Source: Glycera tridactyla (Eukaryota). From it: 64,000 nucleotides of DNA. The stretch lies in contig OZ286473.1 in the NCBI GenBank assembly GCA_965644265.1, forward strand, positions 66,526,001 to 66,590,000. The letters are read 5' to 3'. How positions within the stretch are numbered: the first letter of the stretch is position 1; each line of letters starts with the position of its first letter. Positions 27,315 through 63,508 of the stretch are shown here, in pieces. Position numbers and translations under genes: made by a program. Under the pieces are notes generated by a model that saw only the letters and a list, made by a program, of their open reading frames with translations, was not told where the DNA came from and searched no databases.

Positions 27315-27428
27315 CTGTTTGGCAATGAGTTTCTTCAAATCCATCAGCACAAATACAGTTGTATGAATTGATGGTGTCATTGCATGTTGCCCCATTCTCA
27401 CATGGATTAGAAATGCACTCATCAATAT
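27315..27428 (-). CDS. EGF exon, GC donor
   Basis: [38 protein letters not shown]; |GCAAGT. Confidence 0.85.
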
Positions 27429-27730
27429 CTGTAACAAACAATATCGATATTGAAAATAAAAGCATAGAAATAACATCCTAAAGAGATCTATATGTAGATA
27501 GTGAGAATGGGTGAATTTTTCGGGTTCGTCATCATCTTCATCATCATAATCATTCATCATCATCATCATCATCATCATTAGCATCATTTTTGGCATCAGC
27601 ATCAGCATCAGCACCAGCATCAGAGAAAAAATTGACCTATTCTCAAGATAATAACGAAGAGAAGAGGGATATTGTTGAAGAGGGACAATTTATAGGAAAA
27701 CAGCTGATAGAATCCACAGATGTAGCTTGC

Positions 27731-27844
27731 CTGTTTCACAATGAGTCCCTTCATATCCATCAGTACATATGCAATAGTAGGAATTGACGCTGTCATTGCA
27801 AGTTGCTCCATTCTCACATGGATTACTACTGCACTCATCAATAT
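27731..27844 (-). CDS. EGF exon, GC donor
   Basis: [38 protein letters not shown]; |GCAAGC. Confidence 0.85.
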
Positions 27845-28113
27845 CTATAACAGACAATATCAATATGGAGAATGATATGAGGATGCAGATAACACTCCAC
27901 AAGGTGTAGGTGGATAGATCGGATAAGTAGATCCTAATTGCTACAAGGTTGAACAACTATACATTTTTTCTTCTTCATGAAAGTATCTCATGAAACTTAT
28001 AATGTTAGAGGTGATTGACACAAACCTATTCCAAAAAGCACTTTTCAGCAGTCAATGCTAACATGAAGTGAATTATTGGAGTGAAGCAGAAAGTATTTAC
28101 AAATGTGACTTGC

Positions 28114-28227
28114 CTGTTTCACAATGAGTTCCTTCATATCCATCAGCACATGAACAATCGTAGGAACTTATGGTGTCATTGCAAGTTGCCCCATTCTCAC
28201 ATGGATAACTACTACACTCATCGATAT
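28114..28227 (-). CDS. EGF exon, GC donor
   Basis: [38 protein letters not shown]; |GCAAGT. Confidence 0.85.
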
Positions 28228-28802
28228 CTGTAACAGACATCATCAATGTGGTCAATGTCATGGGGATGGAAATGACTTCCTACCAGAAAATATTGAATCA
28301 ATACAGAAATCGGATGGATTATCCTCCTCCTCCTCCTCCTCTTTCATCCTCCTGACTTCACCCCCTCCTCTTCATCATCATCATGGTACTGAATCAATAC
28401 AGAAATTGGGTGGAGTATCTTCATCCTCCTTCTCCTTTATCCTTCTGCTCCCTCCTCCTCCACCTCTTCCTGATCCTGCTTCTTCTCCTACTCATCATCA
28501 TGATACTTAATCAATACAGAAACTGGGTGGATTATCAACATCCTCCTTCTCCTTCATCGTTCTGCTTCCTTCTCGTTTGGCTCTTCCTTCTCATCCTGCT
28601 GCTCCTTCTCCTCCTCCTTCTCCTCCTCCTCCTTCTCCTCATTATCATTATCATCATCAACATCACCAGCACCATCATCAGCAGCAGCAGCGGCAGCAGC
28701 AGCAGCAGCATTATGTCATACACAGGGAATACATTGACCTATCCTCAAATTGATAAGAAAGAAGAGAGGAAATAACTGATAGTATTTGCAAATGTAACTT
28801 GC

Positions 28803-28916
28803 CTGTTTCACAATGAGTCCCTTCATATCCATCACCACATATGCAATCGTAGGAATTGACGCTGTCATTGCAAGTTGCTCCATTCTCACATGGATTACTA
28901 CTACACTCATCAATAT
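28803..28916 (-). CDS. EGF exon, GC donor
   Basis: [38 protein letters not shown]; |GCAAGT. Confidence 0.85.
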
Positions 28917-29035
28917 CTGAAACAGACAATAGCAATATCGAGAATATTATGAGGATGCAAATAACACTCAACAAGGTAGAGGTGGATAGAGCAGATAAAT
29001 AGATTATTAGGGATCGTAATCATCATCATCATCAT

Positions 29036-29066
<31 letters not shown>

Positions 29067-29644
29067 AGCACATGGTCAGAGCACCTGAGATTGTATATCT
29101 GTGTGGAGATCATGACATCATCAGAAAACAAGAACACTTGTTTTTTTCTCTGAGAATCACAGGGAGAAGGAATATGATTTCGAACAATGACTGCATATTA
29201 CGGAAATAGTGCAATTTCATCTCCTTTGAATATATCTTGCATGTTTCATTATGTATTTCTTCATGTCATATGGAATATGTGCAATTATAGAGATAAACAG
29301 GACATAGCTAGTTGCCTTTTCGTGCATGTATTGTCAATCTGATAACCATATTTTGTGACCCATTAATCTCAAGTTCATTGTATGAGGGACATCCTGCTTT
29401 TGTATGAAAAAGGAACAACGAGTATTCACGATAACTCTGACATTCAAGAGCAGGTGGGCATGATTCGATGGCCATACTGGCCAGATCAACCACCGATCAT
29501 AATCGTCATGAGATCGCAAGATTATTTTTCCATAGATTCAACAGCAATCAAATTACCATTTGTCATACAACGGGATGACATGGAACTTCTGAAGAGGAAG
29601 GATATATAGGAGAGCAGCATATGGTATTGGAAAATGTCACTTGC

Positions 29645-29758
29645 CTGTTTCACAATGACTTCCTTCAAATCCATCAGCACAAATACAATTGTATGAATTG
29701 ATGGTGTCATTGCATGTTGCTCCATCCTCACATGGATTACTACTGCATTCATCAATAT
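29645..29758 (-). CDS. EGF exon, GC donor
   Basis: [38 protein letters not shown]; |GCAAGT. Confidence 0.85.
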
Positions 29759-29830
29759 CTGTAACAGGCAATGACATTAATGGAGATGTCATTAGGATGA
29801 AAACACATGCTCCATCAAATTTATGAGTAG

Positions 29831-29907
29831 AAATACAATTGTATGAATTGATGGTGTCATCGCATGTTGCCCATTCTAACATGGATTATTACTGCACTCA
29901 TCAATAT
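29831..29907 (-). pseudogene. Truncated EGF pseudo-exon (acceptor intact, in-frame TAG, donor deleted)
   Basis: cag|ATATTGATGAGTGCAGTAATAATCCATGTTAG; 3' third of the exon is missing. Confidence 0.85.
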
Positions 29908-30604
29908 CTGTAACAGACAATATCGATAGGGAAGATGACATGAGGATAAAAGCACATGCTACATCAAATTTTTGAATAGATGGAGGGAGTTTGGAGTGTA
30001 TTTTTGATTATCACCTTCATAATGACAATCATCATCACCATTACCATCATCATCATAATCAAAATCATCATCGACAACAACTCCCTTTTTTGGCGTCATT
30101 GGAGAAATATGAACATGTCCTTCCAATGAGGATCGCAGAAATGAGAAATGTGATTAGGAATAATGAATGGACATTACATTTGAGAAAAATTATGTGATTA
30201 TATAAAATATGATATTTTTCGAGTGTTTACATATGTGTCCCTCAATATTCATCAGCATATATGCAATTGTGACAATGAACAAGGTATGCCAAGTTGTATC
30301 TCCTTGCATGGAGAATCGATGCAGTCACAAAATTCTGTGAATGAATGATCTCATGATAATTGTTGGAGAGACAACATAATCATTGTACAATCAGAAAATA
30401 ACCTGTATATACGAATGTTCGCAAAGATAGTCAAGGACAGTAGGGATGATAAGGTGGCTTTACTGACCACATGTGCTAATAATCCTCATTGTCATAAGAT
30501 TAAACAACTCAGCAGTCAATGCTAACATGGGGCCAATCACCATTGTTGCCGACGTTGAGTGAATTATTGGGGAGAACCAAAGAGTATTTGAATATGTGAC
30601 TTGC

Positions 30605-30718
30605 CTGTTTCACAATGAGTTCCTTCAAATCCATCTGCACAAATACAATCGTATGAATTGATGGTGTCATTGCATGTTGCTCCATTCTCACATGGATTAG
30701 AAATGCACTCATCAATAT
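30605..30718 (-). CDS. EGF exon, GC donor
   Basis: [38 protein letters not shown]; |GCAAGT. Confidence 0.85.
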
Positions 30719-30971
30719 CTGTAACAAACAGTATCGATATGAAAAATGTCCAAAGCGAGAAATTTATATGTAGATTGTGAGAATGTGTGAATTTTTCGGG
30801 TTTATCATCATCATCATGATCATCATCAGCATCAGCGTCAGCATCAGCATCAGGTTATATACAGAGAAAAAATTGACCTATTCTCAAGAAAAAGAGAGAG
30901 AGAAGAGAGATATTGTTCAAAAGCGACAGTTTATAGGAAAACAGCGGATCGAATCCACAAATGTAACCTGC

Positions 30972-31085
30972 CTGTTTCACAATGAGTCCCTTCATATCCT
31001 TCAGTACATGTGCAATAGTAGGAATTGACGCTGTCATTGCAAGTCGCTCCATTCTCACATGGATTACTACTGCACTCATCAATAT
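30972..31085 (-). CDS. EGF exon, GC donor
   Basis: [38 protein letters not shown]; |GCAGGT. Confidence 0.85.
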
Positions 31086-31354
31086 CTATAACAGACAATA
31101 TCGATATGGAGAATCATAGGAGGATGCAAATAACACTTCACAAGGTTTCGGTCGAAAGAGTGGATAAGTAGATTCTAATTGCTACAAGGTTGAACAACTA
31201 TACATTTTTTCTTCCTCACGAAAGTATCTCATGAAACTTATAATGTTAGAGGTGATTGACACAAACCTATTCCAAAAAGCACTTTTCAGCAGTCAATGCT
31301 GACATGAAGTGAATTATTGGAGTGAAGCAGAAAGTATTTACAAATGTGACTTGC

Positions 31355-31468
31355 CTGTTTCACAATGAGTTCCTTCATATCCATCAGCACATGAACAATT
31401 GTAGGAACTTATGGTGTCATTGCAAGTTGCCCCATTCTCACATGGATAACTACTACACTCATCAATAT
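31355..31468 (-). CDS. EGF exon, GC donor
   Basis: [38 protein letters not shown]; |GCAAGT. Confidence 0.85.
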
Positions 31469-32091
31469 CTGTAACAGACATCATCAATGTGGTCAATGTC
31501 ATGGGGATGAAAATGACTTGCTACCAGAGATTATTGAATCAGTACAGAAATCGGATGGATTATCCTCCTCCTCCTCCTCTTTCATCCTCCTGATTTCACC
31601 CCCTCCTGTTCATCATCATCGAGGTACTGAATCAATACAGAAATTGGGTGGAGTATCTTCATACTCCTTCTCCTTCATCCTTCTGCTCCCTCCTCCTCCA
31701 CCTCCTCCTGCTTCTGCTTCTTCTCCTACTCATCATCATGATACTCGATCAATACAGAAACTGGATGGATTATCAACATCCTTCTTCTCCTTCACCGTTC
31801 TGCTTTCTTCTCGTTTGGCTCTNNNNNNNNNNNNNNNNNNNNNNNNNNNNNNNNNNNNNNNNNNNNNNNNNNNNNNNNNNNNNNNNNNNNNNNNNNNNNN
31901 NNNNNNNNNNNNNNNNNNNNNNNNNNNNNNNNNNNNNNNNNNNNNNNNNNNNNNNNNNNNNNNNNNNNNNNNNNNNNNNNNNNNNNNATACATTGACCTA
32001 TCCTCAAATTGATTAGAAAGAAATGAGGGATATTGTCGAAGTGGAACATTTTTAGGGAAATTAACTGATAGTATTTGCAAATGTAACTTGC

Positions 32092-32205
32092 CTGTTTCAC
32101 AATGAGTCCCTTCATATCCATCACTACATATGCAATCGTAGGAATTGATGCTGTCATTGCAAGTTGCTCCATTCTCACACCGATTACTACTACACTCATC
32201 AATAT
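32092..32205 (-). CDS. EGF exon, GC donor
   Basis: [38 protein letters not shown]; |GCAAGT. Confidence 0.85.
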
Positions 32206-32895
32206 CTGAAACAGACAATAGTAATATCGTGAATATTATGAGGATGCGAATAACACTCAACAAGGTAGAGGTGGATAGAGCAGATAAATAGATTATTAGG
32301 GATCGTAATCATCATCATCATCATCAACAACAAAAACAACAACATCACATGGTCAGAGCACCTGAGATTGTATATCTGTGTGGAGATCATGACATCATTA
32401 GAGAACAAGAACACTTGTTTTTTTCTCTGAGAATCACAGAGAGAAGGAAAATGATTTCGAACAATGACTGCATATTACAGAAATAGTGCAATTTCATCTC
32501 CTTTGAATATATCTTGCATGTTTCATTATGTACTTCTTCATGTCCCATGATATATGTGCAATTATAGAGATAAACAAGACATAGCTAGTTGCCTTTTCCT
32601 GCATGGATTGTCCATCTGATAATCATTTTTTGTGACCCATTATTCTCAAGTTCATTGTATGAGGAACAACGAATTTTCACAATGAATCTGACATTCAAGA
32701 GCAGTTAGGCATGATTCGATGGCGATACTGGCCAGATCAGCCACGGATCATAATTGTCATGAGATCGCAAGATTATTTTTCCATAGATACAACAGCTATC
32801 GAATTACGATTTGTCATACACCGGGATGACATGGAACTTCTGAAGAGGGAGGATATATAGGAGAGCAGCACATGGTATTGGAAAATGTCACTTGC

Positions 32896-33009
32896 CTGTT
32901 TCACAAAGATTTCCTTCAAATCCATCAGCACAAATACAATTGTATGAATTGATGGTGTCATTGCATGTTGCTCCATTCTCACATGGATTACTACTGCATT
33001 CATCAATAT
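32896..33009 (-). CDS. EGF exon, GC donor
   Basis: [38 protein letters not shown]; |GCAAGT. Confidence 0.85.
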
Positions 33010-33081
33010 CTGTAACAGACAATGTCATCAATGGAGATATCATTAGGATGAAAACACATGCTCCATCAAATTTATGAGTAG

Positions 33082-33149
33082 AAATACAATTGTATGAATT
33101 CATGGTGTCATCACATTCTAACATGGATTACTACTGCACTCATCAATAT
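33082..33149 (-). pseudogene. Truncated EGF pseudo-exon, paralogue of 29831-29907
   Basis: Same TAG and same 3' truncation plus a further internal deletion. Confidence 0.85.
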
Positions 33150-33846
33150 CTGTAACAGACAATATTGATAGGGAAGATGACATGAGGATAAAAGCACATG
33201 CTACATCAAATTTTTGAATAGATGGAGAGAGTTTGGAGTGTATTTTTGATTATCACCTTCAAAATGACAATCATCATCACCATTACCATCATCATCATAA
33301 TCAAAATCATCATCAACAACAACTTCTTTTTTTGGCGTCATTGGAAAAATATGAACACATGTCCTTCCTATGAGAATCACAGAAATGAGAAATGTGATTA
33401 GGAATGGTGGATGGACATCACAAATGAGGAAATTATGTGATTATATCAAATATGATATTTTTCGAGTGTTTATATATGTGTCCCTCGATATTCATCAGCA
33501 TATGTGCAATTGTGACAATGAACAAGGTATACCAAGTTGTATCTCCTTGCATGGAGAATCGATGCAGTCACAAAATTCTGTGAATGAATGATCCCATGAT
33601 AATTGTTGGAGAGACAACATAATTATTGTACAATCAGAAAATAACCTGTATATACGAATGTTCGCAGATATTCAAGGTCAGTGAGGGATGATACGTTGGC
33701 TTTACTGACCACATGTGCTAATAATCCTCATTATCATGAGATTAAACAACTCAGCAGTCAATGCTAACATGGGGCCAATCACCATTGTTGCCGACGTTGA
33801 GTGAATTATTGGGGAGAACCAAATAGTATTTGAATATGTGACTTGC

Positions 33847-33960
33847 CTGTTTCACAATGAGTTCCTTCAAATCCATCAGCACAAATACAATTGTATGAAT
33901 TGATGGTGTCATTGCATGTTGCTCCATTCTCACATGGATTAGAAATACACTCATCAATAT
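33847..33960 (-). CDS. EGF exon, GC donor
   Basis: [38 protein letters not shown]; |GCAAGT. Confidence 0.85.
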
Positions 33961-34213
33961 CTGTAACGAACAATATCGATATGAAAAATGTCCTAAGTAA
34001 GAAATTTATATGTAGATTGTGAGAATGTGTGAATTTTTCGGGTTTATCATCATCATCATGATCATCATCAGCATCAGCGTCAGCATCAGCATTATGTCAT
34101 ACACAGAAAAAAAAAGACCTATTCTCAAGAAAATAAGTGAGAGAAGAGGGATATTGTTCGAAAGCTACAATTTATAGGAGAACAGTTGATCAAATCCACA
34201 AATGTAACTTTGC

Positions 34214-34327
34214 CTGTTTCACAATGAGTCCCTTCATATCCTTCAGTACATGTGCAAAAGTAGGAATTGACGCTGTCATTGCATGCTGCTCCATTCTCAC
34301 ATGGATTACTACTGCACTCATCAATAT
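34214..34327 (-). CDS. EGF exon, weak GC donor
   Basis: [38 protein letters not shown]; |GCAAAG. Confidence 0.7.
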
Positions 34328-34583
34328 CTATAACAGACAATATTAATATGGAGCATGGTATGAGGATGCAAATAACGCTCCATAAGGTGAAGGTGGATAG
34401 AGCGGATAAGTAGATCCTCATTGCTACAACATTGAACAACTATACATTTTTTCTTCCTCACAAATGTATCTCATGGAACTTATAATGTTAGAGGTGATTG
34501 ACACAAACCTATTCCAATGAGCACTTCTCAGCAGTCAATGCTGACATGAGGTGAATTTTTGGGGAGAAGCAAATGTGACTTGC

Positions 34584-34697
34584 CTGTTTCACAATGAGAT
34601 CCTTCATATCCATCAGCACATGAACAATTGTAGGAACTTATGGTGTCATTGCAAGTTGCCCCATTCTCACATGGATAACTACTACACTCATCAATAT
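34584..34697 (-). CDS. EGF exon, GC donor
   Basis: [38 protein letters not shown]; |GCAAGT. Confidence 0.85.
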
Positions 34698-35170
34698 CTG
34701 TAACAGACATCATCAATATGGTCGATGTCAAGGGAATGGAAACCACTTCCTACAAATATTACTGAACCAATACAGAAATTGGATGGATTTTCTTCCACCT
34801 CCTCTTTCATCCTCCTGATTTCACCTCCTCCTCTTCTTCATCATCATGATACTCAATAATACAGAAATTGGTTGGATTATCAACATCATCCTTCTCCGCC
34901 ATCATTCTGCTNNNNNNNNNNNNNNNNNNNNNNNNNNNNNNNNNNNNNNNNNNNNNNNNNNNNNNNNNNNNNNNNNNNNNNNNNNNNNNNNNNNNNNNNN
35001 NNNNNNNNNNNNNNNNNNNNNNNNNNNNNNNNNNNNNNNNNNNNNNNNNNNNNNTGCAACAGTATGCCATACACAGGGAATACACTGATCTATTCTCCAA
35101 TTGATAACAGAAAATAGAGGGATATCGTCGAAGTGGCACCATTTTAGGGAAAATCGCAAATATAACTTGC

Positions 35171-35284
35171 CTGTTTCACAATGAGTCCCTCCATATCCAT
35201 CAGTACATATGCAATTGTAGGAATTGATGCTGTCATTGCAAGTTGCTCTACTCTCACATGGATCACTACTGCACTCATCAACAT
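35171..35284 (-). CDS. EGF exon, AAG acceptor, GC donor
   Basis: [38 protein letters not shown]; |GCAAGT. Confidence 0.7.
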
Positions 35285-36015: not shown

Positions 36016-36129
36016 CTGTTTCACAATGATCTCCTTCATACCCATCAGCACAAATACAATTGTATGAATTGATGGTGTCATCGCATGTTGCCCCATTCTC
36101 ACATGGATTACTACTGCATTCATCAATAT
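36016..36129 (-). CDS. EGF exon, weak GC donor
   Basis: [38 protein letters not shown]; |GCATGT. Confidence 0.7.
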
Positions 36130-36934: not shown

Positions 36935-37048
36935 CTGTTTCACAATGAGTTCCTCCATATCCATCAGCACAAAAACAATAGTATGAATTGATGGTGTTGT
37001 TACAAGATGCCCCATTCTCACAGGGATTACTACTACACTCATCAATAT
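36935..37048 (-). CDS. EGF exon, GC donor
   Basis: [38 protein letters not shown]; |GCAAGA. Confidence 0.8.
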
Positions 37049-37716: not shown

Positions 37717-37830
37717 CTGTTTCAAAATGAGTCCCTTCATATCCATCACTACATATGCAATTGTAGGAATTGACACTGTCATTGCAAGATGCCCCATTCT
37801 CACATGGATTACTACTACACTCATCAATAT
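37717..37830 (-). CDS. EGF exon with Cys6 to Phe, AAG acceptor, GC donor
   Basis: [38 protein letters not shown]; |GCAAGT. Confidence 0.6.
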
Positions 37831-41046: not shown

Positions 41047-41077
<31 letters not shown>

Positions 41078-51829: not shown

Positions 51830-52640
51830 ATTGTCATACTACAGCCGAACATTGTTTGAATGCGCGTATCGAATATTGTCTTGCTAGGATATGCCGTCTT
51901 GATCGCCTCAGACCTTGCACTGGGTTCGTAGTGACCCATAACAGCCGTAGCGCCATCTGGATATTGCTGTCACTCAAAGACGCATTCTTGCATCGCGAAT
52001 TATACAAACCATGCACTGGATCCGTATTGTACACAAACAGCCGCTATGCAATCTGGCTGGTGCCCCAACGCACATGTACTTATGAATGAATGTACTTGGT
52101 GTGTGAGCGTGCGCACACGTATTGATGATTAATTGTACATGGTGTGTGTGTGTGTGTTTGTGGGAATGTTAGCGATTTGTGAATCTTACATGAGAGGGTG
52201 TTTGTAGGCATGTGAGTGTAGTTGAGTGCAAGCTGGTGAGTCTATACGATCATCCTTTCTGTGCTAGAAGTGACTGTGTGCGCGTTTTTGGTGTGAAGGT
52301 GCATGAGTATGTTTGCATTATTGTATGTGCTTATGTGTGAATGCGTGCTCAAGTGTAGTTATCTAATTCCGTGTGTGTTTCCTTTTCTCTTTGTTTTTTC
52401 TTTTTTTCATTACCCACAAGGTTTGTTGCACTGTATCGCTGTTCTTGCAAAAAGAGATGTAACTCTGTGTGTACATACATGTGTAGTTTCTGAGCGTTTA
52501 TGATGTCATGCACCCATGGTTGACTATCACACTCACTCGAGCCAATGTGTCTTGTTTCTCTTCAATTGGTACCCAAAGTCAGGTGACCTCGTTATTGATT
52601 TGTCCTCTGTACATGTTCACTGTCGCTCGACCAACTCCGT

Positions 52641-54190
52641 GTGTGGCAAAACCCTAATTGGGCACCACCCTTTCCATCACCACCATACTATTTTGATCTT
52701 GTGCTTGTACATAGATTTGCTATTGTTCCTTTATGTTCTACTATGCCTCATTATCTGTTTTATGCTAATATCCATCTACGATATTTGACAATCTGCCTTG
52801 AGTCATGCTTGTATTGTGCACCTGAAATATTTCTCCAACTCCCCCTACTTGGTAAAGTATACTGTTACCGCTTATAGTTAAACCAGCTCAAGGATTGTCC
52901 CCTGGACCTGCTGTTTATTGCTCAACCTGCCTCACGTGTGGTACAACCCTAATTGGGCACCACCGCCTCTATCACCACCTTAAATCTCGATGTTCTGTAT
53001 TCTCTCCAATTTGTCTTTGTCCTTTTATGTTCGACCTTGCCTCATGACTGACACAAGTTGCCATAGGCGCCACCTATCGTATCCTGCAGGCAGAACCCTA
53101 ATTGGGCACCTGTTGCGATCAAGATGCTAGACTGTTACAACCTGCCTTGGGTCTGACCCTTATTGGGCACCCAATGACTTCTCCTACTTGGTAAGTTGCA
53201 TTGTTGCCGTTCACAGATGAACCTGCTTAAAAAGCCGTGCCTCCTATCGCATCCACCGCATAACACCATCTATTGACCAGACCTCTGGACTATGCCGCGG
53301 ATGCGTCCGGCCGTATCCTGCGGGCTTGACCCTTTGTCACGCTCGACCACATCGACTCCATATCAACATCTACTGGCCTTGCAGTGTTTCTTTTTCTTTT
53401 CGAATACTACCATGAACTTTGCAATAAGCACCACCAACTGTAAGCAAAACCCCAATTGTGCACCTGCTGTTAACAGGATAACTGCAACTGGAAGTTTAAC
53501 CTGCAACACTAAGTTGCAGATACTCTCTTCATTTTTCCTTTTCTGTTAGCCCTCAGGCACAACCCTAATTGGGCACCTGTGGTCATCCTGCTGATACATA
53601 TATCTCTGTTATAAATGGTTCTATGTTACACCTGACAATGTCATAACTGCCATCTATCTTAGCAAACAGGGACAACCCTAATTGGGCACCTGTGGTTAAC
53701 TTATTGACAATGCTAATGACTACAATCTGCAATTGCCTCTATTGTGTTATTTTTTTTTTCTTTTTTCTGCATTTATTTCTCTTATTGTTCACAGGTACGA
53801 CCCTAATTGGGCACCTGGTGGCCTCTGTGTCTATAATGATGCCTCTTAGTATAGCAATAATCTCTATATATCATCTAATATTGTGATCATCTTCTCGTGA
53901 ACCGGCTGGTACTTAACTGTTGTTTTTCTCACGATGATCTCCCATAATTTGTCTCTAATTCACTCTATTACATGCTGTCTCACTATTTGCTATTTTTCTG
54001 CCAGTAGCCTGATTTATCGAAAATTATAGTGTGGCATAACCCTAATTGGGCACCATATTCTTTGAGTGTTTCTTTACTACGCTCTCTTTTCCATCTACTT
54101 GACTGCAACTGCTCATTGAGGATGAAACAATATGACTCATTCTGTTCCTGGCTATGGATTGGTTAGAATAACCCTTATTGGGCACTACTC
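52641..54190 (+). repeat. Array of ten ~25-30 nt hairpin motifs, core RACCCTAATTGGGCACC, with variable spacers
   Basis: Cores at 52650, 52945, 53094, 53155, 53448, 53561, 53674, 53799, 54038, 54170. Confidence 0.92.
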
Positions 54191-54361
54191 ACTCCTGTCG
54201 GGACCAGAAATTATTTCTTACTTAGCTCCACCAATATCCTTGAACCACAGTTACTGTGTACTGTGTATCTAATCCCCTAATCTTCAATATTATGACCTGT
54301 GCAGTTCTCCTAGACACAGACCCAAGCATTTCCTACTCACCCAGGGACCCACCCCCTAATT

Positions 54362-57281
54362 ATGGTTGAGTTTCCAACACAAACTCCTCTTTCCAAAATT
54401 GATTACACAATTTACTCCCTCTCTAAATTAAATGGCGTGGCGTTTGGTGCATATAATATTCGCAGACTTGTACCCAAACTAGATTCCATCAAGATACTGC
54501 TGGATAAAACAAAGCTAGATATACTTGTCCTGACCGAAACATTTTTAAACAGCTCGATCAATGACAGTGAGCTTATAGTTGATGGCTTTAACCTTTATCG
54601 CCAGGACCAGAATAAGGATTCATGTAAAAAATCAGGCGGAGGGATTATTGCCTATGTACGTAAGGCATACTCTGTTAGTCTAGAAGACTCTGCCTGTTCT
54701 CTGAACAAAGACTTAGAGTCTATGTGGCTTACTTTGCGTTTACCGAGAACAAAGCCGATTTTAATTGGTGCTTGCTATCAGCCACCTGATGGCAGTCTGG
54801 TAAATGCAACTGAAATGCTGACCACGTCCATCAATCACCTTCTAACAAATAAAAATGAAGAAATAATCTGCCTCGGGGATCTGAATATTGATACATCCAA
54901 CCCCTCGCAAGACACCCAAAACATACCGTGACTTCCTAATACTTGAGAAGCTGTCCCAAATCATCAAACAGCCAACTAGAGTTACTAAATCTTCTTCCAC
55001 TACAATCGACCATTTCTGTACCAACAACGCTGATCTTTACCAACGCTGTGGTACAATTGATCCTGGCCTGAGTGATCACAGTCTCATCTTTGCCTGTAGG
55101 AAATACCTAAAACTACCCAAACTCAAAGTAACTATAACTATCCGTTCTCGCCGCCACTTCGATATAGATAACTTTAAACAGGACATGATCAACTCTGACT
55201 GGAGCTCTGTCATCGATACAACTGACCCCAACTTAGTAACTCCAAGGTTCAATAGTATTATGCTCCGATTAATTGACAAGCATCTGCCGCTCATTAGTAT
55301 TAGGGTGAGAAGCAACAGTGTCCCATGGGTAACGAAGGAATACCTCAGTTATACTGACCGACGGAAATACCTCTCACGGCTTTATAAAAAGAACCCCACT
55401 GATGAATTGCTTGAAATGAAGAAAAATGCAATTCGAGAATGTAATAGACTCAAGCGTCGACTGAAAACTGATTATATCAATTGTAAATTAGAAGAACATA
55501 AGAGTGACGACAAAAAACTATGGGAAGAGTTACGGCACATTCTACCAGACTCTAACAATAACTCAGGCAGTACTATTGAAGAAATCAATGGCATCCCTGG
55601 CGATCTGAAAATTGCGAATGAATTAAACCAACACTTCTGTAGTACGGCTAAAACCCTCGTTGACAGAATCCCTGCAGAGACTAATCCCTCTCTGACGCCG
55701 TGTTTGCCACCCATATTTGACCTAAAGCCAGCCTCTATCAAGGATATCCAGGATGGAATTAGCCAACTTTCGAACTCGAAATCGAGTAGCAATGACAGTA
55801 TTACTTCTGAACTTTTAAAATCATGTAATGAAATTATTAGCCCGGTCATCTTGCATCTAGTTAATTCAAGTATTATTAGCAAAACTTTTCCATCTGTCTG
55901 GAAAGTTGCTAATGTAAGGCCTCTTTTTAAATCAGGTAAAACAAATCTTGCAACAAACTACCGTCCAATCTCTATCTTGCCTACCGTTAGCAAGATTCTG
56001 GAGCGAATTGTCCATACTCAAACATATAATTATATGACCGTAAATAACCTGCTGACAGACGCCCAGGCGGAGTTCAGGAAGGGACACTCAACAGGCACCT
56101 GTCTAATGGCCTTTCTTGATGAGATATATCATGCCATCGAGCGGGGTGAATTAAGTGGAGTGCTCTTCCTGGACCTCTCCAAGGCATTTGATACTGTCGA
56201 CCATATTTTACTGATTCAGAAATTAAGGAACATGGGCTGCAAAGCGAGTACATTATCATGGTTCAAATCATACTTATCTGAACGCACTCAGAAGACCATT
56301 GTCAATATCTCCTCCTCGACCACCCTGAACATTGATTACGGAGTACCACAAGGCTCTATTTTAGGCCCCCTTCTCTTTACGATTTATGTAAACGATATCA
56401 CTGAGCATGTACTTTCTAGTAAGACATTCCTTTATGCAGACGACACTGCCATATTATATTCCGCAAAGGACCCGGGGGAAATTTTGGCCAATCTGTCACT
56501 AGACTTAGTAGCTCTACAGAAATGGTTCAACTCAAACAAACTGACGCTTAATATCAACAAGTGTAAACTTATGTTTTTCGGAAGTCGGTCGAAATTGGGA
56601 CAGTCGACTGACTTAAACCTGCATTTTAATGACACGATAATTGAACGTCCCACCTCCTTTAAGTACTTAGGTCTGACTTTAGACCCGTCTCTATCCTTTA
56701 CCGAACATGTCTCAAATGTGGTTCATAGCGTGTCTTATAAAACTGGGATGTTGTGGAGGTTGCGCCCATACATCAACAAGGATGTTGCTTTAAAACTTTT
56801 TAAAGTGTTGATTAACCCACTCTTTTGCTATGTCGATTTCATATATGACGCCACATCAGTGACGAATAAAAAGAGACTCCAAATTGCCCAGAACAAGGCC
56901 CTCAAATGTGTGCTCAATGTGGGACGTCGGACTCCAAGTGTCTACATTCACAAAACAACAAGGATAATGTATTTACAGAAGCAGAGAGACCTCCGTTCGA
57001 TGATTGAAATACATAAAATCATGACCGGCCATTGTCCTCCCATGATATCAGACAGAATTAAGCAAAAAAATCCCTCTAGGGTCCACACTAGACAGTCTGA
57101 AAAATGCTTGATTGAAATCCCGAAGATCAAGTATGAATTAAGTCGCGGTAACATTTTCCTTAGGGGCAGTATATTGTGGAATAAGCTCGACTCTGATCTT
57201 AAGGACATAGAAAATGCTCAATCATTAAGAAGTGAACTAAAAATCCAGGCCCTTGAGAACCTTTCCGGCTTGCCTGATTAG
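54362..57281 (+). CDS. LINE ORF2 (APE endonuclease + reverse transcriptase), single frameshift near 54900-54930
   Basis: YNIR, TETFL, GGGIIAY, GDLNID, DHF, SDH; LDLSKAFDTVDH, GVPQGSILGPLLF, YADDT, YLG. Confidence 0.93.
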
Positions 57282-57505
57282 ATTGCATGAACCATTCTAA
57301 TTCATGCTGAATCATATTGTCTCATCTCCTCCTCTTTTGTATTTTTTTTTGTACATATATGTCCTGTAAATACTGTATATACTGTTATATGTTCTCGCAA
57401 GCCCTGAGTTCATCTGGCTTTCAGATACGGGGCTTGTTTTTTTGAGAGTAAAATAAAGTATTAAAAAAAAAAATGTAAAACCTAAGTTCCCTAAGTCTAG
57501 GGGGC

Positions 57506-59450
57506 GTGGCCGCAAACGTCAGCCCTAGGGCAGCGTGCGTCGCTCCCTCAGGATCGCTAGTGGTAAGAGCTCATCTTCTACAATTTCTGGATCAATGGCG
57601 GTTGATAACCTCGAACAGATTTGTTCTGTCAGTAGTGGGGAAGGGCCTCTCTCTGATTTTCATTCAGCAACCCCCTCTGTCACAAGTTCTCCATCCCTCT
57701 TCGTTACCAAGAGGGCAGGAGAAGAGAGAAGCTCTTTTGCTGGAGATCAAGAACATGTTGCAGAAGGACGCAGTAGTCCTGGTAGGGCCGGAGGACAGTC
57801 CAGGATTTTATTGCAACCTGTTCTCGGTTGCCGAGTCAACGGGGGGTTTTAGTCCTATAATCAATTTGAAGCCGCTAAATCTTCTTCTGTACAATCAGAA
57901 GTTCAAGATGGAGACTGCCCGGTCAGTGGTGAAGTCAGTGTCACTCATGGACTGGACAGTCTCCATCGACCTCAAGGATGCTTATTTTCATGTACCGATC
58001 CGAGAGGAGTTCCAGAAATACCTGCGATTCACTGTATCGGAGCAGGAGGGGTACCAGTTCAAAGCCCTTCCCTTCGGCCTTTCCTCGGCAACAAGGGTTT
58101 TCACCATAGTGTTGAGGGAAGTGGTGCAGCACCTCCATCAGAAAGGAAAAAAGATTCATTTCTACTTACATGACTGGTTGCTGAGGCATCAGGATTCAAC
58201 TATTCTCGAGAGTCATCTGAATTATGAGGTCCAGTTGGCAACAGATCTAGGTTGGATCATCCACTAAGAAAAAACAGATCTGATTCCTTCCCGCCAGTTC
58301 ACCTACCTGAGTATCGAGTTCGATACCCAGGAGGGAACCGTCAGACCATCATGAAAGAGAATAGAAAAGTTGAATCTTTGCATACAACTATTTCAGAGGA
58401 GGCCTCAGCAACCAGTCAGAGCCATCCTGCGTTTACTGGGCCATATGTCCAGTTTGACTGATTTTGTACATCTGGGGAGGCTTCATATGAGGCAGCTCCA
58501 ATTATACCTCCTATCAAAATGAAGACCCTTTGCCGACCCCTTAGAGGTCATGTTACTGCTTCCCAGGGAGGAGATTGCAAGTCTGATTTGGTGGCAGATT
58601 CCACGAACTCTTACAGCGGGATTCCATTAGAACCTTGTCAGTCCACAGTGATGGTCATGACAGATGCCTCTCTGTCAGGTTGGAGTGCGCAGTTGACAGT
58701 AGGAGAGAGAGATAGCTGGTTCTTGGCCTCACACTCACATGGGCAGGTCGATAAACTCCCTAGAATTGGAGGCAATTCTACTAGCCTTTCAACAGTTTGT
58801 TCCCTTCCTTCAGAATCAAGTAGTGTTAGTCTTATCGGACAACAGCACAGCAATTTCTTATATAAAGAAACAGGGGGGAATGCTCTCTCCTATGTGCACT
58901 AGCCTGGAGAATTTTCATGCTTGCAGAGAAACTGTCAATGATAGTTCAAGTCCGCCACATTCCAGGCAAAAGGAATGTTGTAGGGAACGCTCTTTCAAGG
59001 GTCAAACCAATCCAAACAGAATGGGAACTTTGCCCTCTAGTTTTCAACCAAATCAATCAGAAGTTCAATCTTTCACCTATCATTGACCTGATGGCCACTC
59101 CGGCCAACACGAAACTTCCAATTTTCGTGTGTCCATTTCCCAATCAGAAAGCATGGGCAGTAGATGCTCTTTCAGTGCAATGGGAGGGCTTCGGAGTGGG
59201 TTATGTTTACCCTCCGACAGCGTTGATAAAGGAAGTCATCAGCAAGCTGAGAAGAAGGGAGATCACACTGGTTTGCATAGCACCATGGTGGCCGAACCAG
59301 TCATGGTTTCCCGACCTTTTGAAAATGTCGATAGACCTACCATTAGAACTTCCGATCTCAAAAAAGTTGGTAACACAGATGGTGGATAGGAAGAGAGTCT
59401 TCCACTGCAGACCACAGATCTTAGGGCTGACCGCTTGGTGTCTGTCCGGG
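57506..59450 (+). pseudogene. DIRS RT - RNase H - adenine-methyltransferase-like ORF, frameshifted
   Basis: L.QF...W..IT, IINLKPLN, IDLKDAYFHVPI, LPFGL, YLHDWL; TDASLSGW, INSLELEAI, SDNST, HIPGK.NV; IDLMAT..N.KLP.F, YVYPP, APWWP.QSWFP. Confidence 0.9.
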
Positions 59451-59459
59451 GTGCCCTCA

Positions 59460-60486
59460 AGCAAAAGGGTTATTCGGCAAAGGTTGTCGAGCGGATCGCT
59501 CGATCAGACCAGAATTCTGCTTCTATCTACGATAGCCGCTGGAAAAAGTGGTTCTACTGGTGTGAGTGGATTGTGAGAACCCCTCTACTCCGCAGGTAGT
59601 ACAATTTTTCATTGAGCTCTTCGAAGCCAGTTTACAACCATGTACTGTAAGGGGTTATCGAAATGTGTTGCAATCTGTGTATGTCCACACTGACTGTAAT
59701 GTTTTGAACAGTAGTGAAGTCAAGTCTTCGCAGAATGACCTTGAGCTCGAGAGACCAATTATTCAGAAGACAGTTCCACAATGGGATTTATCCTTGATTC
59801 TTAAGTTCTTAAAGAGTCCTTGCTTTGAACCTTTGGAAGATTGTTTGGTTTCATATCTTACAAAGAAAACTGTCTTTTTGGTAGCGCTGGTCTCAGGCAG
59901 ACGCCGTAGTGAAATACATGCATTTTCAGGCTCTACAGGACTAGTGAGATTCACTGCAGATAAATCATCTGTTAGAATTTATTCAGTTCCAGGGTTTCTG
60001 GCTAAGAACCAGAAGCCCTTGGCTAGATCTCCTGAGATTAGGATTCCAGCTATCCCAAATTGTGTAGATGAAGAGGTAGACAATTCCTTGTGTCCGGTGA
60101 GAGCCCTGGATATTTATCTACAAAGGGTGGCTGCTTGGAGGGCGAATAGAATCAGATTATTTCTGCCAGTCAGTAGAGCAACCACGGGCAAATTACGTTT
60201 GGACAGAATATCTGCTTGGATACAGCAAACAGTAAAACAAGCATACGAGGCAGCTGACAGAGATGAAGATCTTCCTAGCTCTGTGTCAGCTCATGAAGTT
60301 TGAGCCTTATCCACATCATGGAAAGCATTGAATCAGGCTTGTTCCATTGAGGAGTTAATGCAGGCAGCATTTTGGAAGTCTGGCAGTACATTTCCAACCT
60401 TTTTTTGAGGGATATGTGCGGCTAGGCTTTCGACCTGTATTCTCTGGGTCCAATAGTAGTCGCTCAATCCGTGGTTAATCCATAGC
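59460..60486 (+). pseudogene. DIRS tyrosine recombinase, inactivated
   Basis: Y...WKKW..WC, KTVFLVALVSGRRRSEIH, LCPVRAL, AHEV*(R to TGA at 60301), W....TF; catalytic Tyr region frameshifted; C-terminal LYSLGPIVVAQ. Confidence 0.9.
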
Positions 60487-60496
60487 GTGTAATATC

Positions 60497-61038
60497 ACTC
60501 CAGTCTTGAATACTCGGGTACTAGCCGAGAGGCAAGGAGTTTGCATGGTATCTCTATAATTGTGTTGTTTTCTGTATAGGCTCTAGGTCTCGAATAGGGT
60601 ATTAGCCGAGAGACACGGAGCAATCAATAGGTTTTTTATTTCAAATAATGTACATTTCAATAGGCTCTATGCCTTGAAGACTCGGATATTAGCCAAGAGA
60701 CACGGAGCAATCAACATATGCTCTCAATGATTGATAATTATTTGTGTTGTATATATCTATAGGCTCTATGTCTTGAAGACTCGGGTATTAGCCGAGAGAC
60801 ACGGAGCATGCAGCATATGTTTTTGAAATTGATTCATGATTATTCATATTGTACATATCAATAGGCTCTAGGTCCTTAAATACTCGGGTATTAGCCGAGA
60901 GACACAGAGCATTATCAAACACTGAGATTGAAATGTATATAGCTGTTTATAGCAATAGGCTCTAGGTCTTGAATACTCGGGGTAATGAATTTTTTTTTCA
61001 CCTGTGATTCAGATATAGGTACCCGAGAGACACGGAGC
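60497..61038 (+). repeat. Six-copy structured repeat in the DIRS 3' non-coding region
   Basis: Core GCTCTAGGTCTTGAATACTCGGGTATTAGCCGAGAGACACGGAGC at 60497, 60580, 60664, 60763, 60865, 60959. Confidence 0.9.
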
Positions 61039-61076
61039 ATCCAGAGGGCTCTACACCCTCCATCCATGTCATATTC

Positions 61077-61136
61077 AATGCTAAATCTGAGGAAGAAATG
61101 GTACAGATAGATCCACCCCAGGTTTGGTTCTCTAAC
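61077..61136 (+). other. DIRS internal complementary region (ICR)
   Basis: 61077-61113 is the reverse complement of the left terminus 45038-45074; 61119-61136 is the reverse complement of the right terminus 61335-61352. Confidence 0.88.
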
Positions 61137-61218
61137 CTTGGGATCTATACTTACCATTTCTCCCTCAAATTTGAGGGTCCCTCCCGTCCGTCCCCATTGT
61201 AGAGCAATATAGAAGCTT

Positions 61219-61338
61219 GTTGAAAATATACACAGAGATACGGCAGTGGCCGCGGGACGTCAACGGTCCCGCCTGACATCTGGCGGGATTATCGGCGGCC
61301 GGGAGGAACACCCCTAATTGAAATTCTTATTGTTGTTA
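61219..61338 (+). repeat. DIRS right inverted terminal repeat (plus short right extension to ~61352)
   Basis: Reverse complement of 45104-45222. Confidence 0.92.
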
Positions 61339-61354
61339 GAGAACCGAACCTGAT

Positions 61355-61860
61355 GAGGGGGGGGGGTTCTGATAATGTATTGCAAGATAACTTATCATAT
61401 CATATCATGGCTGTATTCAACTAGAATATTGGTGCCTTCAGATTTATCATCAACGTGAGCATGTCCCGCTGTAATTAATTAATTCTGGTCTTTAGATCTT
61501 TATACTATGGACAACTTCTAGGGACTACTACTTCTATTATGGTACTTCATCAATCTGCAAATTTGAATAATAATTTGGTGAAATGTTTGCTTTTTGGTTC
61601 TATTACTGAGATTATTTACCGCAATACAATGTGCTGAGACATCATGACAACAGTTGTCGCAAGAATATTATGTGATGTTTTTGATGTTCTGAGGTGTGTC
61701 TCGAAAACCTTTCCACTTTTGTGTAAATTTATTTGTGTTGTCAATTTGTACATATGTTTTTTTACTATGTTCATTTGTACTCTTGAGGGAAGGAAATGAT
61801 CCTGTGATCTTCCCTGCTAGAGTTTAATAAAGTTTCTTTCAATCAATCAATCAATCAATC
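61355..61860 (+). mobile_element. Probable 3' UTR end of the LINE at 43469, ending AATAAA (61826-61831) + (TCAA)n
   Basis: Typical CR1/L2 microsatellite tail; continuity across the DIRS insertion is inferred. Confidence 0.55.
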
Positions 61861-62008
61861 GATCATCATAAGCAGCAGCAGCAGCATGTCATACACAGGG
61901 AATACATCCACATATTCTCAAATTAAAAAAAAAAAAGGGAGAGATGAATATTGTTGAAGGGGGCAATGTAAGGGAAAATAGTCGATAGTATTCGCAAATG
62001 TAGCTTGC

Positions 62009-62122
62009 CTGTTTCACAATGAGTTCCTTCATATCCATCAGTACATATACAACTGTAGGAATTGACGCTGTCATTGCAATTCGCCCCGTTCTCACATGGA
62101 TTACTACTACACTCATCAATAT
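62009..62122 (-). CDS. EGF exon, GC donor
   Basis: [38 protein letters not shown]; |GCAAGC. Confidence 0.85.
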
Positions 62123-62234
62123 CTGCAACAGACAATATCGATATGGAAAATGTTATGAAAATGCAAATAACATTCCGCACGAGATGTAGAGGTGGATGGA
62201 GCTGAAAAGTCAATCAGTAGGGATCATCATCATC

Positions 62235-62266
<32 letters not shown>

Positions 62267-63005
62267 CATCGTCATCATCTTAACTTCTCTGAAAATATCT
62301 TGCATGTTTTATGATATGCCTCTTCTTGTCCATTGCCATATGTGTAATCATAGCGATAAACAAAGTATAGCTAGTTGCCTTTTCCTGCATGGAACATGAA
62401 TGCAATCACTAGCATCGTCAACAACAACTACAACATCATCACCATTGTCGAAGCACCTGAGATTGTATATCTGTGTGGAGACCATGCCATCATTAGAGAA
62501 AATTAATACATGTCCTTTTTATGAGAGTCAGAGAGAGGAGGAATAGGATTTTGAATAATGAATGCATAATGCCGTTAAGGAAATACTGCAATTTTATCTA
62601 CCTTGAATATATCTTGCATGTTCCATGATATGCCTCTTCATCGATTGGCATATGTGCAATCATAGCAATGAACAAGGCATAGCTGGTTGCCTCTACCTGT
62701 ATGGATTATCAATGGAATCACCACCTTTTGTGACCCAACAAACTCATGATCATTGTATGAGGGACATCCTGCTTTTGTGTGAGGAGCGAATAACGAGTAT
62801 TCACATTGACTTTGACATTCAATGTCAGTGGAGCATGGCAATACTGGCCACATCAGCTACCGATCATCATTGTCATATGAGATTATTTTGATATGAATTT
62901 ATCAGTTAGTGAATAATCAGTTGTCATACAGGAAGATTACATTAAACTTCTGTAGAGGGAGGATATAAAGGAGAACTGCATATGGTATTGGAAAGTGTGA
63001 CTAGC

Positions 63006-63119
63006 CTGTTTCACAATAAGTTCCTCCATATCCATCAGCACGAATACAATTGTATGAATTGATGGTGTAATTGCATTGTGCCCCATTCTCACATAGATTA
63101 CAATTGTACTCATCAATAT
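63006..63119 (-). CDS. Degenerate EGF exon (Cys1 and Cys5 lost), weak GC donor; may be skipped
   Basis: [38 protein letters not shown]; |GCTAGT. Confidence 0.45.
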
Positions 63120-63394
63120 CTGTGATGGACAATATCGAGAGAGAAAATGTCATGAGCATTGAGGTGGAATCCAAACGGAATTTATAGGTAGATGTCTTAC
63201 ACAGGGGATACATTGACCTATTCTCACATCAAGAACCAAGAAAAGAGGAATATTGTTGAAGAGGGATGAATCATAAGAAAAAAACTGATAGCATTCGCCT
63301 TTTTCTCGCACAGATTACTGATGCACTAAGCAAAATTGTTGAAGAGGGAAGTTTCTTAGGAGAGTAGCAGAAATAATCAGGGGATGTCACTTGC

Positions 63395-63508
63395 CTGTCT
63401 CACAATGAGTCCCTCCATATCCATCAGCACATATACAGTTGTATGAATTTACGATGTCATTGCAAGTTGCCCCATTCTCACAGGGAATACTTATGCACTC
63501 ATCAATTC
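63395..63508 (-). CDS. EGF exon, GC donor
   Basis: [38 protein letters not shown]; |GCAAGT. Confidence 0.8.

What the first reader, a model, noticed from the sequence alone, without database searches (positions are those of the whole stretch)
27315..63508. Twenty-five consecutive GC-AG introns in one EGF exon array
Seen: every intact exon from 63395 to 27315 ends GARACAG|GC (mostly GCAAGT); only the two 3'-most exons use GT. Established: GC-AG introns are on the order of 1% of spliceosomal introns, need strong flanking consensus (AG|GCAAGT, as here) and are enriched in alternative splicing. Inference: one GC donor was amplified by tandem duplication and retained. Because all exons are 114 bp and phase 1-1, weak donors permit frame-preserving skipping and thus combinatorial, variable-length EGF rods. 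Donor variants GCAAAG, GCATGT and GCTAGT give a graded strength series. GT-only gene predictors would mis-annotate this locus.
Basis: partly seen in the sequence, partly recalled or inferred. Interest (0 to 1): 0.75.

Follow-up and report, generated by a model that had tools for sequence, protein, structure and literature searches.

The report
Tandem EGF exon array with GC donors
A large invertebrate gene for a rod of calcium-binding EGF modules has 27 consecutive introns that start with the rare GC instead of GT; the odd signal was copied along with the exons by tandem duplication, and nothing yet shows that it has a special role.

Summary
On the minus strand, 25 EGF exons of 114 bp (phase 1-1) end CAG|GC. 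Two more lie just beyond the window, so 27 of the gene's 29 array donors are GC. The four N gaps all lie inside introns.

The GC exons carry the marks of working splice donors:
- They match 6.7 of the 7 other consensus positions, against 5.0 for GT donors in sister arrays.
- None has an in-frame GT alternative.
- Exons are 94-96% conserved where deep intron is about 72%.

GC is not a genome-wide habit. Three other EGF arrays have 0 GC among 81 donors. In a matched genome-wide pattern count, 40 of 42 GC hits fall in two amplified loci, against 157 GT hits.

All window exons form one clade, so amplification of a single founder donor is supported. A neighbouring paralogous gene has 13 GC and 5 GT donors.

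It is also not needed: GT-only arrays of the same design in Lingula and Mercenaria already have annotated isoforms that differ by multiples of 38 residues.

Verdict: a real and extreme example of a known intron class, most likely inherited passively.

The parts
63395..63508 (-). cbEGF exon, donor CAG|GCAAGT
63006..63119 (-). degenerate EGF exon (three Cys lost), donor CAG|GCTAGT
62009..62122 (-). cbEGF exon, donor CAG|GCAAGC; followed by an 18.9-kb intron
43104..62008 (-). 18.9-kb intron holding retroelements (plus-strand LINE, RT at 54888-57281) and N gap 43228-43468
42990..43103 (-). cbEGF exon, donor CAG|GCAAGC
42694..42807 (-). cbEGF exon, donor CAG|GCAAGT
41586..41699 (-). cbEGF exon, donor CAG|GCAAGT
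40843..40956 (-). pseudo-exon: frameshifted EGF copy whose donor G+1 is mutated (CAG|ACAAGT)
39557..39670 (-). cbEGF exon, donor CAG|GCAAGT
38630..38743 (-). cbEGF exon, donor CAG|GCAAGT; its intron holds N gap 37914-38054
37717..37830 (-). EGF exon with Cys6 changed to Phe and an AAG acceptor, donor CAG|GCAAGT
36935..37048 (-). cbEGF exon, donor CAG|GCAAGA
36016..36129 (-). cbEGF exon, donor CAG|GCATGT
35171..35284 (-). cbEGF exon (first of repeat unit A), AAG acceptor, donor CAG|GCAAGT; its intron holds N gap 34912-35054
34584..34697 (-). cbEGF exon, donor CAG|GCAAGT
34214..34327 (-). cbEGF exon, donor CAG|GCAAAG
33847..33960 (-). cbEGF exon, donor CAG|GCAAGT
33062..33149 (-). decayed EGF pseudo-exon (stop and frameshift, no donor), a local 149-bp duplication just upstream of exon 33009
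32896..33009 (-). cbEGF exon, donor CAG|GCAAGT
32092..32205 (-). cbEGF exon (first of repeat unit B), donor CAG|GCAAGT; its intron holds N gap 31823-31987
31355..31468 (-). cbEGF exon, donor CAG|GCAAGT
30972..31085 (-). cbEGF exon, donor CAG|GCAGGT
30605..30718 (-). cbEGF exon, donor CAG|GCAAGT
29811..29907 (-). decayed EGF pseudo-exon, homologous to 33149-33062
29645..29758 (-). cbEGF exon, donor CAG|GCAAGT
28803..28916 (-). cbEGF exon (first of repeat unit C), donor CAG|GCAAGT
28114..28227 (-). cbEGF exon, donor CAG|GCAAGT
27731..27844 (-). cbEGF exon, donor CAG|GCAAGC
27315..27428 (-). cbEGF exon ending CAAACAG (..CQT), donor GCAAGT; last GC donor
26414..26527 (-). cbEGF exon with GT donor (CAG|GTAAGT); nested in a GC clade, so a C-to-T reversion
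2209..26413 (-). 24.2-kb intron holding LINE fragments and a same-strand Ty3/gypsy-type element with gag, pol and a Baculo_F-like env ORF (observed only)
2095..2208 (-). different EGF exon type ([15 protein letters not shown]..), donor TTG|GTAAGT; its counterpart in the neighbouring gene is at L010 4314-4201
25628..35284 (-). three copies of a 5-exon repeat unit of about 3.2 kb (A 35284-32206, B 32205-28917, C 28916-25628); A and B 93% identical, C about 80%

Best explanation
The window is the middle of one large minus-strand gene. The gene runs from about G000:C39:66,598,500 down to at least 66,524,500 and encodes a secreted or matrix protein built mostly from Notch-type calcium-binding EGF modules, one module per 114-bp phase 1-1 exon.

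An ancestral exon in this array had the donor CAG|GCAAGT. Repeated tandem duplication copied that donor with the exon, first as single exon-intron units and later as a 5-exon unit of about 3.2 kb. The gene now has 27 consecutive U2-type GC-AG introns. The same state is shared with the paralogous gene about 40 kb downstream.

The GC donors are most likely used constitutively. Every other donor position is held at the U1-complementary consensus, which compensates for the C at +2. An occasional C-to-T change turns a copy into GT with no visible consequence. GC is therefore a passively inherited, roughly neutral state rather than a device.

Shown: the anatomy, the compensation, the exon constraint, the single origin within this gene, and the locus specificity.

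Inferred: that the sites are spliced in vivo, and that GC is neutral.
For: Anatomy: 27 of 29 array donors are GC.

Compensation:
- GC donors match 6.7 of the 7 non-dinucleotide consensus positions. GT donors match 5.0 in three sister arrays of the same genome, and 5.1 and 4.4 in Lingula and Mercenaria (Mann-Whitney P about 2e-18, copies not independent).
- Among the 7 GT exons in the family, 3 have drifted to 5 of 7 or fewer matches. Only 1 of 40 GC donors has (Fisher P = 0.008). This is what is expected if the flanking positions are constrained only while +2 is C.
- No exon has an in-frame, stop-free GT alternative with even 4 of 7 matches within -54 to +150 nt.

The exons are functional:
- Between repeat units, exons are 94-96% identical, flanks within 40 nt 82-94% (90-94% for units B and C), and deep intron 70-72%.
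- dN/dS is 0.33-0.57.
- The one copy whose donor G is mutated (40956-40843) is also frameshifted.

Single origin and age:
- The window exons form one clade, and GT tips are nested singly inside GC clades.
- The neighbouring gene has 13 GC and 5 GT donors.

Locus specificity:
- Three other arrays have 0 GC among 81 donors.
- Genome-wide, the pattern G[FY]xGxxCET followed by G|GCRAG has 42 hits: 31 in this gene pair, 9 in one other tandem array and 2 singletons. The GT version has 157 hits.

A second, independent case exists. At C39:51.17-51.19 Mb, one GC donor inside a 2.25-kb three-exon unit is present in 9 copies.

Literature: GC donors make up about 1% of introns, with the rest of the consensus strengthened (PMC3167603, PMC7242645).
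Against: - There is no transcript evidence.
- No database protein matches these exons at more than 72% identity.
- This gene has fewer GT reversions than a neutral simulation predicts (2 against 11, P about 0.04 at the nominal rate).
- Synonymous sites (dS 0.10) and 40-nt intron flanks are much better conserved than deep intron. Both could point to splicing regulation rather than passive inheritance.
- Repeat copy number is uncertain because of the gaps.
Confidence: 0.72

Rival explanations
1. The GC donors are kept by selection because they are weak. Each symmetric 114-bp exon can then be skipped on its own, giving a combinatorial family of EGF rods of different lengths, with the donor variants setting graded inclusion levels.
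For: - All exons are phase 1-1, so any skip keeps the frame.
- In this gene only 2 GT are seen where 11 are expected under neutral C/T exchange.
- Intron flanks of about 40 nt and synonymous sites are unusually conserved, a known mark of alternative exons.
- In humans GC donors are about ten times commoner in alternative than in constitutive introns (PMC3167603).
Against: - The deficit disappears if the intron rate is halved, and it is absent in the neighbouring gene (5 seen, 5.1 expected).
- The GC donors match the U1-complementary consensus at 8 of 9 positions, while most GT donors of sister arrays match 7 of 9.
- Arrays of the same design with only GT donors in Lingula and Mercenaria already have annotated isoforms lacking 1, 2 or 4 exons, so GC is not needed for skipping.
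- Exon-centred gene conversion would equally explain the conserved flanks.
- No RNA data are available.
Confidence: 0.17
2. The array, or a large part of it, is no longer expressed or is decaying. The GC 'donors' would then be relics that the spliceosome does not use.
For: - No RNA run was listed.
- Two exons have lost cysteines and three copies are clear pseudo-exons.
- Two introns have swollen to 19 and 24 kb with retroelements.
- No matching protein is in the databases.
Against: - 23 of the 25 window exons keep all six Cys and an open frame, while the other two frames are full of stops.
- Exons are far better conserved than introns, and dN/dS is below 1.
- The flanking donor consensus is held in 39 of 40 GC copies but relaxes in GT copies.
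- The run search needed 5% of the sampled words from a 5-kb, mostly intronic query, so a blank result is weak evidence.
Confidence: 0.08
3. Assembly or sequencing artefact. Under this reading, collapsed or mis-scaffolded repeats, or a systematic base error, create the appearance of many GC donors.
For: Four N gaps lie in the array. Two are at the same position of the repeat unit, so copy number is uncertain.
Against: - The GC copies differ from one another by 4-30% elsewhere, so they are distinct loci.
- GC is also present in 13 exons of a second gene and in old, diverged exons outside the repeat units.
- GT sits at the same position in 7 family members and 80 paralogous exons, so there is no systematic T-to-C error.
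Confidence: 0.02

Closest known systems
U2-type GC-AG introns (about 0.8-1% of human and mouse introns; PMC7242645, PMC3167603)
   Same: GC at +1/+2 and AG at the 3' end. [quoted passage not shown] There is no U12-type donor motif.
   Different: Known GC-AG introns are described as scattered, usually one or a few per gene. Here 27 stand in an unbroken row in one gene and 13 more in its neighbour, all traceable to duplication. Use in RNA is not shown here.
Arrays of 114-bp phase 1-1 EGF exons in other lophotrochozoans: Lingula anatina 'notch homolog' XP_013388144 and Mercenaria VWDE-like XP_053387515
   Same: The design is the same, one cbEGF module per 114-bp symmetric exon, with 31 and 16 such exons and short introns. 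Annotated isoforms differ by whole multiples of 38 residues.
   Different: All of their donors are GT (49/49 and 41/41 introns), with a weaker flanking consensus (5.1 and 4.4 of 7). Best exon identity to the window is only about 70%, so they are analogues and not shown orthologues.
Notch-type calcium-binding EGF modules (for example human NOTCH1 EGF11-13, PDB 2vj3 and 5uk5)
   Same: The exon profile hits NOTCH1 EGF chains at E = 1e-30 to 1e-41. Six Cys, the D-x-D-E-C start and the C-x-S-x-P-C motif are present.
   Different: No Notch-specific parts (LNR, ankyrin) were seen. The gene's 5' exons instead carry a SEA-like motif that Pfam did not confirm. This is a generic multi-EGF matrix-type protein, not a shown Notch receptor.
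Second amplified GC donor in the same genome (G000:C39:51.172-51.193 Mb)
   Same: One EGF exon ending CAG|GCAAGT was multiplied at least 9 times by tandem duplication.
   Different: Only one of at least three exons per 2.25-kb unit has GC, and its neighbours use GT. The copies are nearly identical, so the amplification is very recent.

Membership tests
U2-type GC-AG intron | GC at intron +1/+2 and AG at the 3' end, at the position that keeps the reading frame | tested here: met
   27 of 27: the frame and the sixth Cys require the exon to end at CAG|GC, and every next exon is preceded by AG
U2-type GC-AG intron | Remaining donor positions closer to consensus than in GT donors (compensation) | tested here: met
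   6.7 of 7 against 5.0 of 7 matches; the consensus relaxes in GT revertants
U2-type GC-AG intron | Not U12-type (no /RTATCCTT donor) | tested here: met
   All donors read GC(A/T)(A/G/T)(G/A)N; none has ATCC at +3 to +6
U2-type GC-AG intron | Junction used in mature RNA | not testable with these tools
No database protein from this locus
Calcium-binding EGF domain (Pfam EGF / EGF_CA) | Six conserved Cys and a Pfam match above the curated cut-off | tested here: met
   PF00008 EGF 41.3 bits (cut-off 21.5) and hEGF 34.4 bits (cut-off 29.3); Cys columns are invariant or nearly so
Calcium-binding EGF domain (Pfam EGF / EGF_CA) | EGF_CA model above cut-off, plus the D-x-D/N-E ... D/N ... Y/F calcium consensus | tested here: inconclusive
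   PF07645 scores 24.7 bits, below the cut-off of 27, but the split first codon (D) could not be included. The consensus DIDEC..ND..SY is visible, and the best solved matches are NOTCH1 cbEGFs
Cassette-exon array giving length isoforms | Symmetric exons whose removal keeps the frame | tested here: met
   All exons are 114 bp, phase 1-1
Cassette-exon array giving length isoforms | Transcripts that differ by whole exons | not testable with these tools
   No RNA for this locus. Only analogues (Lingula, Mercenaria) show annotated isoforms differing by multiples of 38 residues

The most novel reading that the evidence does not exclude
Selection keeps C at +2 in this gene so that each of about 27 symmetric EGF exons is recognised only marginally. 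The conserved intron flanks (about 40 nt upstream, ACAT(T/C)T at +8 downstream) and the constrained synonymous sites would then be the regulatory code that sets inclusion exon by exon, giving a tunable length series of EGF rods. The 40 GC and 7 GT paralogous donors would form a natural allelic series for GC-donor function.
Probability: 0.15. Interest if true: 0.7.

Novelty: new member of a known kind. Interest (0 to 1): 0.4.

Why it matters
GC-AG introns are rare. Whether they are regulatory devices or tolerated accidents is still argued, mostly from scattered single cases. This locus offers 40 paralogous GC donors and 7 GT revertants in almost the same exon and intron context, spread over two neighbouring genes. 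One long-read cDNA experiment could therefore measure what a C at +2 does to exon inclusion when everything else is held nearly constant.

There is also a practical point. Gene finders that allow only GT donors would break this gene, its neighbour and the array at C39:51.17 Mb into fragments. Annotation of this genome should allow GC donors.

The arrangement is striking but needs no new mechanism: one founder GC donor plus tandem duplication explains it.

Tried and rejected
- RNA evidence. The look-up of sequencing runs on window:38055-43227 listed no RNA run and its cap is one search, so read laying was never usable. This does not show the gene is silent.
- Protein databases. A profile of the 28 exons searched against 1.84 billion representatives gave only generic multi-EGF proteins, at most 72% identical per exon. 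A word search with the open frame around exon 42807 gave one hit at 71%. No annotated or transcript-derived product of this locus was found.
- Orthologue hunt with the non-array exons. Only generic EGF similarity turned up.
- SEA domain. Pfam on the conserved 5' and 3' exons of the gene gave nothing above threshold. The SEA-like reading rests on a motif recalled from memory and is only a lead.
- Nearby GT donors. None is in frame and plausible. The GT inside GCAAGT (+5/+6) would shift the frame by 4 nt.
- More genome fetches. The two singleton GC hits (C7:389503, C26:33302846) were therefore not inspected.
- Literature. Searches for tandem arrays of GC donors or GC-AG in EGF genes found nothing relevant.
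- Joined exon model.
- Other operator rules. The N gaps were left unfilled. The retroviral-type element in the 24-kb intron was only observed.

Full report
**Where and what.** The window is G000:C39:66,526,001-66,590,000 of a 2.04-Gb animal genome. Earlier notes of this scan call it a probable annelid; I did not test that. The feature lies on the minus strand.

**Observation.**
- A scan for GARACAG followed by G[CT] found 25 sites. Translation with a 2-nt offset shows that each closes a 114-bp exon encoding a 37-residue EGF module.
- The codon split by each intron is G|AT (Asp). Every intron is therefore phase 1 and every exon is symmetric.
- tblastn with one exon found one further intact GC exon (27428-27315, ending CAAACAG), three decayed copies, and a different EGF exon at 2208-2095.
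- Pfam assigns the exons to EGF/hEGF. The closest solved chains are NOTCH1 calcium-binding EGFs.

**Gaps (checked first, as asked).**
- The four N runs all lie inside introns. The exons on both sides are complete, with AG acceptors and GC donors.
- The gaps at 31823-31987 and 34912-35054 align to the same place of the repeat unit, next to a CT-rich minisatellite that is readable in the third copy.
- Intron sizes that include the estimated gaps (473 and 623 nt) are close to the ungapped homologue (575 nt).
- Continuity cannot be proven. Because all exons are symmetric, the frame would survive a hidden exon. Exon number and repeat copy number are best read as lower bounds.
- Nothing was filled in.

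**Extent of the gene.**
- Flanking DNA from the same contig shows the array continuing 5' with two more GC exons, then one GT exon, then three EGF exons of other types with GT donors.
- This gene therefore has 27 consecutive GC-AG introns, bracketed by GT introns.
- Further 5' and 3' exons are conserved with a paralogous gene 40-65 kb downstream (C39:66.460-66.489 Mb). That gene has the same layout, and its array has 13 GC and 5 GT donors.
- The two giant introns (18.9 and 24.2 kb) are filled with retroelements.

**Are these working donors?**
- Compensation: 19 of 27 are the perfect CAG|GCAAGT. The mean match at the seven positions outside +1/+2 is 6.7. It is 5.0 for 80 GT donors in three other EGF arrays of this genome, and 5.1 and 4.4 in the Lingula and Mercenaria arrays.
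- Relaxation: within the family, GT copies have drifted from the consensus in 3 of 7 cases, GC copies in 1 of 40.
- No alternative: no exon has a usable in-frame GT nearby.
- Constraint: between repeat units B and C, exons are 95.6% identical, flanks within 40 nt 90-94%, flanks at 41-100 nt 84-88%, and deep intron 72%. dN/dS is 0.33-0.57.
- Decay when broken: the only copy with a mutated donor G is also frameshifted.

Together these make real use of the GC sites likely. It is still an inference, because no RNA run was listed for the stretch I asked about and no protein from this locus is in the databases.

**Is GC a habit of this genome?** No.
- Three other arrays of the same exon type have 0 GC, 80 GT and 1 GG donor.
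- A genome-wide pattern for an EGF exon end (G-[FY]-x-G-x-x-C-E-T) followed by G|GCRAG has 42 hits: 31 in this gene pair, 9 in one other tandem array and 2 singletons. The GT version has 157 hits, and the reversed-pattern controls have 0.
- Outside the amplified loci the GC share is therefore about 1%, the usual figure for animals (PMC7242645, PMC3167603).

**Origin.**
- A maximum-likelihood tree of 47 exons with 60 and 80 nt of flank, donor positions masked, puts all 26 window array exons in one clade (support 88/97), 25 GC and 1 GT.
- Exons at the 5' end of the array pair with exons of the neighbouring gene. GT tips sit singly inside GC clades, and the tree needs six state changes.
- Units A and B of a 5-exon repeat of about 3.2 kb are 93% identical. 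Unit C is about 80% identical to them.
The GC state predates the split of the two genes.
- An independent case in the same genome behaves the same way: one GC donor in a 2.25-kb three-exon unit, present in 9 copies at C39:51.17-51.19 Mb.

**Is GC retained by selection?**
- I re-estimated branch lengths on intron columns only. The tree length is 14.5 substitutions per site and the C-to-T rate is 0.82.
- I then simulated neutral C/T exchange at +2.

| Set | GT expected | GT observed | P |
|---|---|---|---|
| All 47 exons | 16 | 7 | 0.08 |
| This gene (29 exons) | 11 | 2 | 0.04 |
| Neighbouring gene (18 exons) | 5.1 | 5 | not significant |

- With the intron rate halved, to allow for alignment noise, nothing is significant.
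- The result is at most a weak hint of retention. It depends on midpoint rooting, an assumed ancestral C, and intron alignments of old copies.

**The skipping idea.**
- The best database relatives are multi-EGF proteins of Patiria, Lingula, Mercenaria, amphioxus and Nematostella.
- I mapped the Lingula and Mercenaria proteins back onto their genes. They have 31 and 16 exons of 114 bp, phase 1-1, and every intron starts with GT.
- Even so, their annotated isoforms lack 38, 76 or 152 residues at various places in the array.
- Frame-preserving exon loss is thus a general property of such arrays and does not need GC donors. Those isoforms are database annotations, and I could not check their RNA support.
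- In this window the GC donors match the U1-complementary consensus at 8 of 9 positions, so calling them weak is not justified by sequence alone. GC donors are, however, reported to splice more slowly (PMC3167603).

**Unexplained.**
- The roughly 40 nt before each exon and the +8 to +35 region after each donor are conserved across both genes. The ACAT(T/C)T motif at +8 is absent from GT arrays.
- Synonymous divergence (0.10) is about a third of deep-intron divergence.
- Either splicing enhancers or exon-centred gene conversion would explain both. I could not separate the two.

- All protein searches were made exon by exon, by reference.
- The retroviral-type element was only described.

**Verdict.** This is a real and unusually long run of GC-AG introns. 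It is best explained as one founder donor multiplied by tandem duplication and kept functional by a perfect flanking consensus. The regulatory reading remains possible but is unsupported.

Noticed in passing
G000:C39:51172364-51192778 (loci L023-L025): A second tandem array: at least 9 near-identical copies of a unit of about 2.25 kb with at least three EGF exons. Only the middle exon ends CAG|GCAAGT, and its neighbours use GT donors.
   Followed up: partly
window, the 40 nt upstream and +8 to +35 downstream of every array exon; also L007-L010: Intron flanks are conserved across old paralogous exons of both genes (upstream ..CATGACATTTTCCATATTGATATTGTCTGTTACAG; downstream ACAT(T/C)T at +8, then ..CTGCTGCT.TCC). 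The ACATTT motif is absent from GT-donor arrays. Possible splicing enhancers, or gene-conversion tracts.
   Followed up: partly
L001 8338-8526 and 6830-7081 (minus); L007 6789-7025: 5' exons conserved between the two paralogous genes carry a ..LEGSITLEDYVYTEELADPKS.. and ..YRPGSVIVDWRLFL.. pair of motifs that recall a SEA domain. Pfam found nothing on the separate exons.
   Followed up: partly
window 12764-20962 (minus): A Ty3/gypsy-type LTR element inside the 24-kb intron, on the same strand as the gene. It has gag (zf-CCHC), pol (protease, RT, RNase H, integrase) and an env-like ORF matching the baculovirus F protein. Observed only.
   Followed up: partly
window 31823-31987, 34912-35054, 28375-28610: Two assembly gaps fall at the same position of the 3.2-kb repeat unit, where the ungapped copy has a CT-rich minisatellite (periods 96-117). 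This sequence is probably what breaks the assembly.
   Followed up: yes
window 33062-33149 and 29811-29907 (minus): A 149-bp local duplication placed a second copy of an EGF exon 26-35 nt upstream of the real one. The upstream copy has a stop and a frameshift and lacks a donor. It was already dead before units A and B duplicated.
   Followed up: partly
L021 (Lingula anatina) and L022 (Mercenaria mercenaria): Arrays of 31 and 16 EGF exons of 114 bp, phase 1-1, all with GT donors. The 14 and 2 other annotated isoforms checked lack 38, 76 or 152 residues (one Lingula isoform differs by a single residue only).
   Followed up: yes
alignment A1 (all array exons): The C-x-S-x-P-C motif between Cys1 and Cys2 has an invariant Ser and a nearly invariant Pro. 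From memory this is the Notch O-glucosylation consensus; it was not tested.
   Followed up: no
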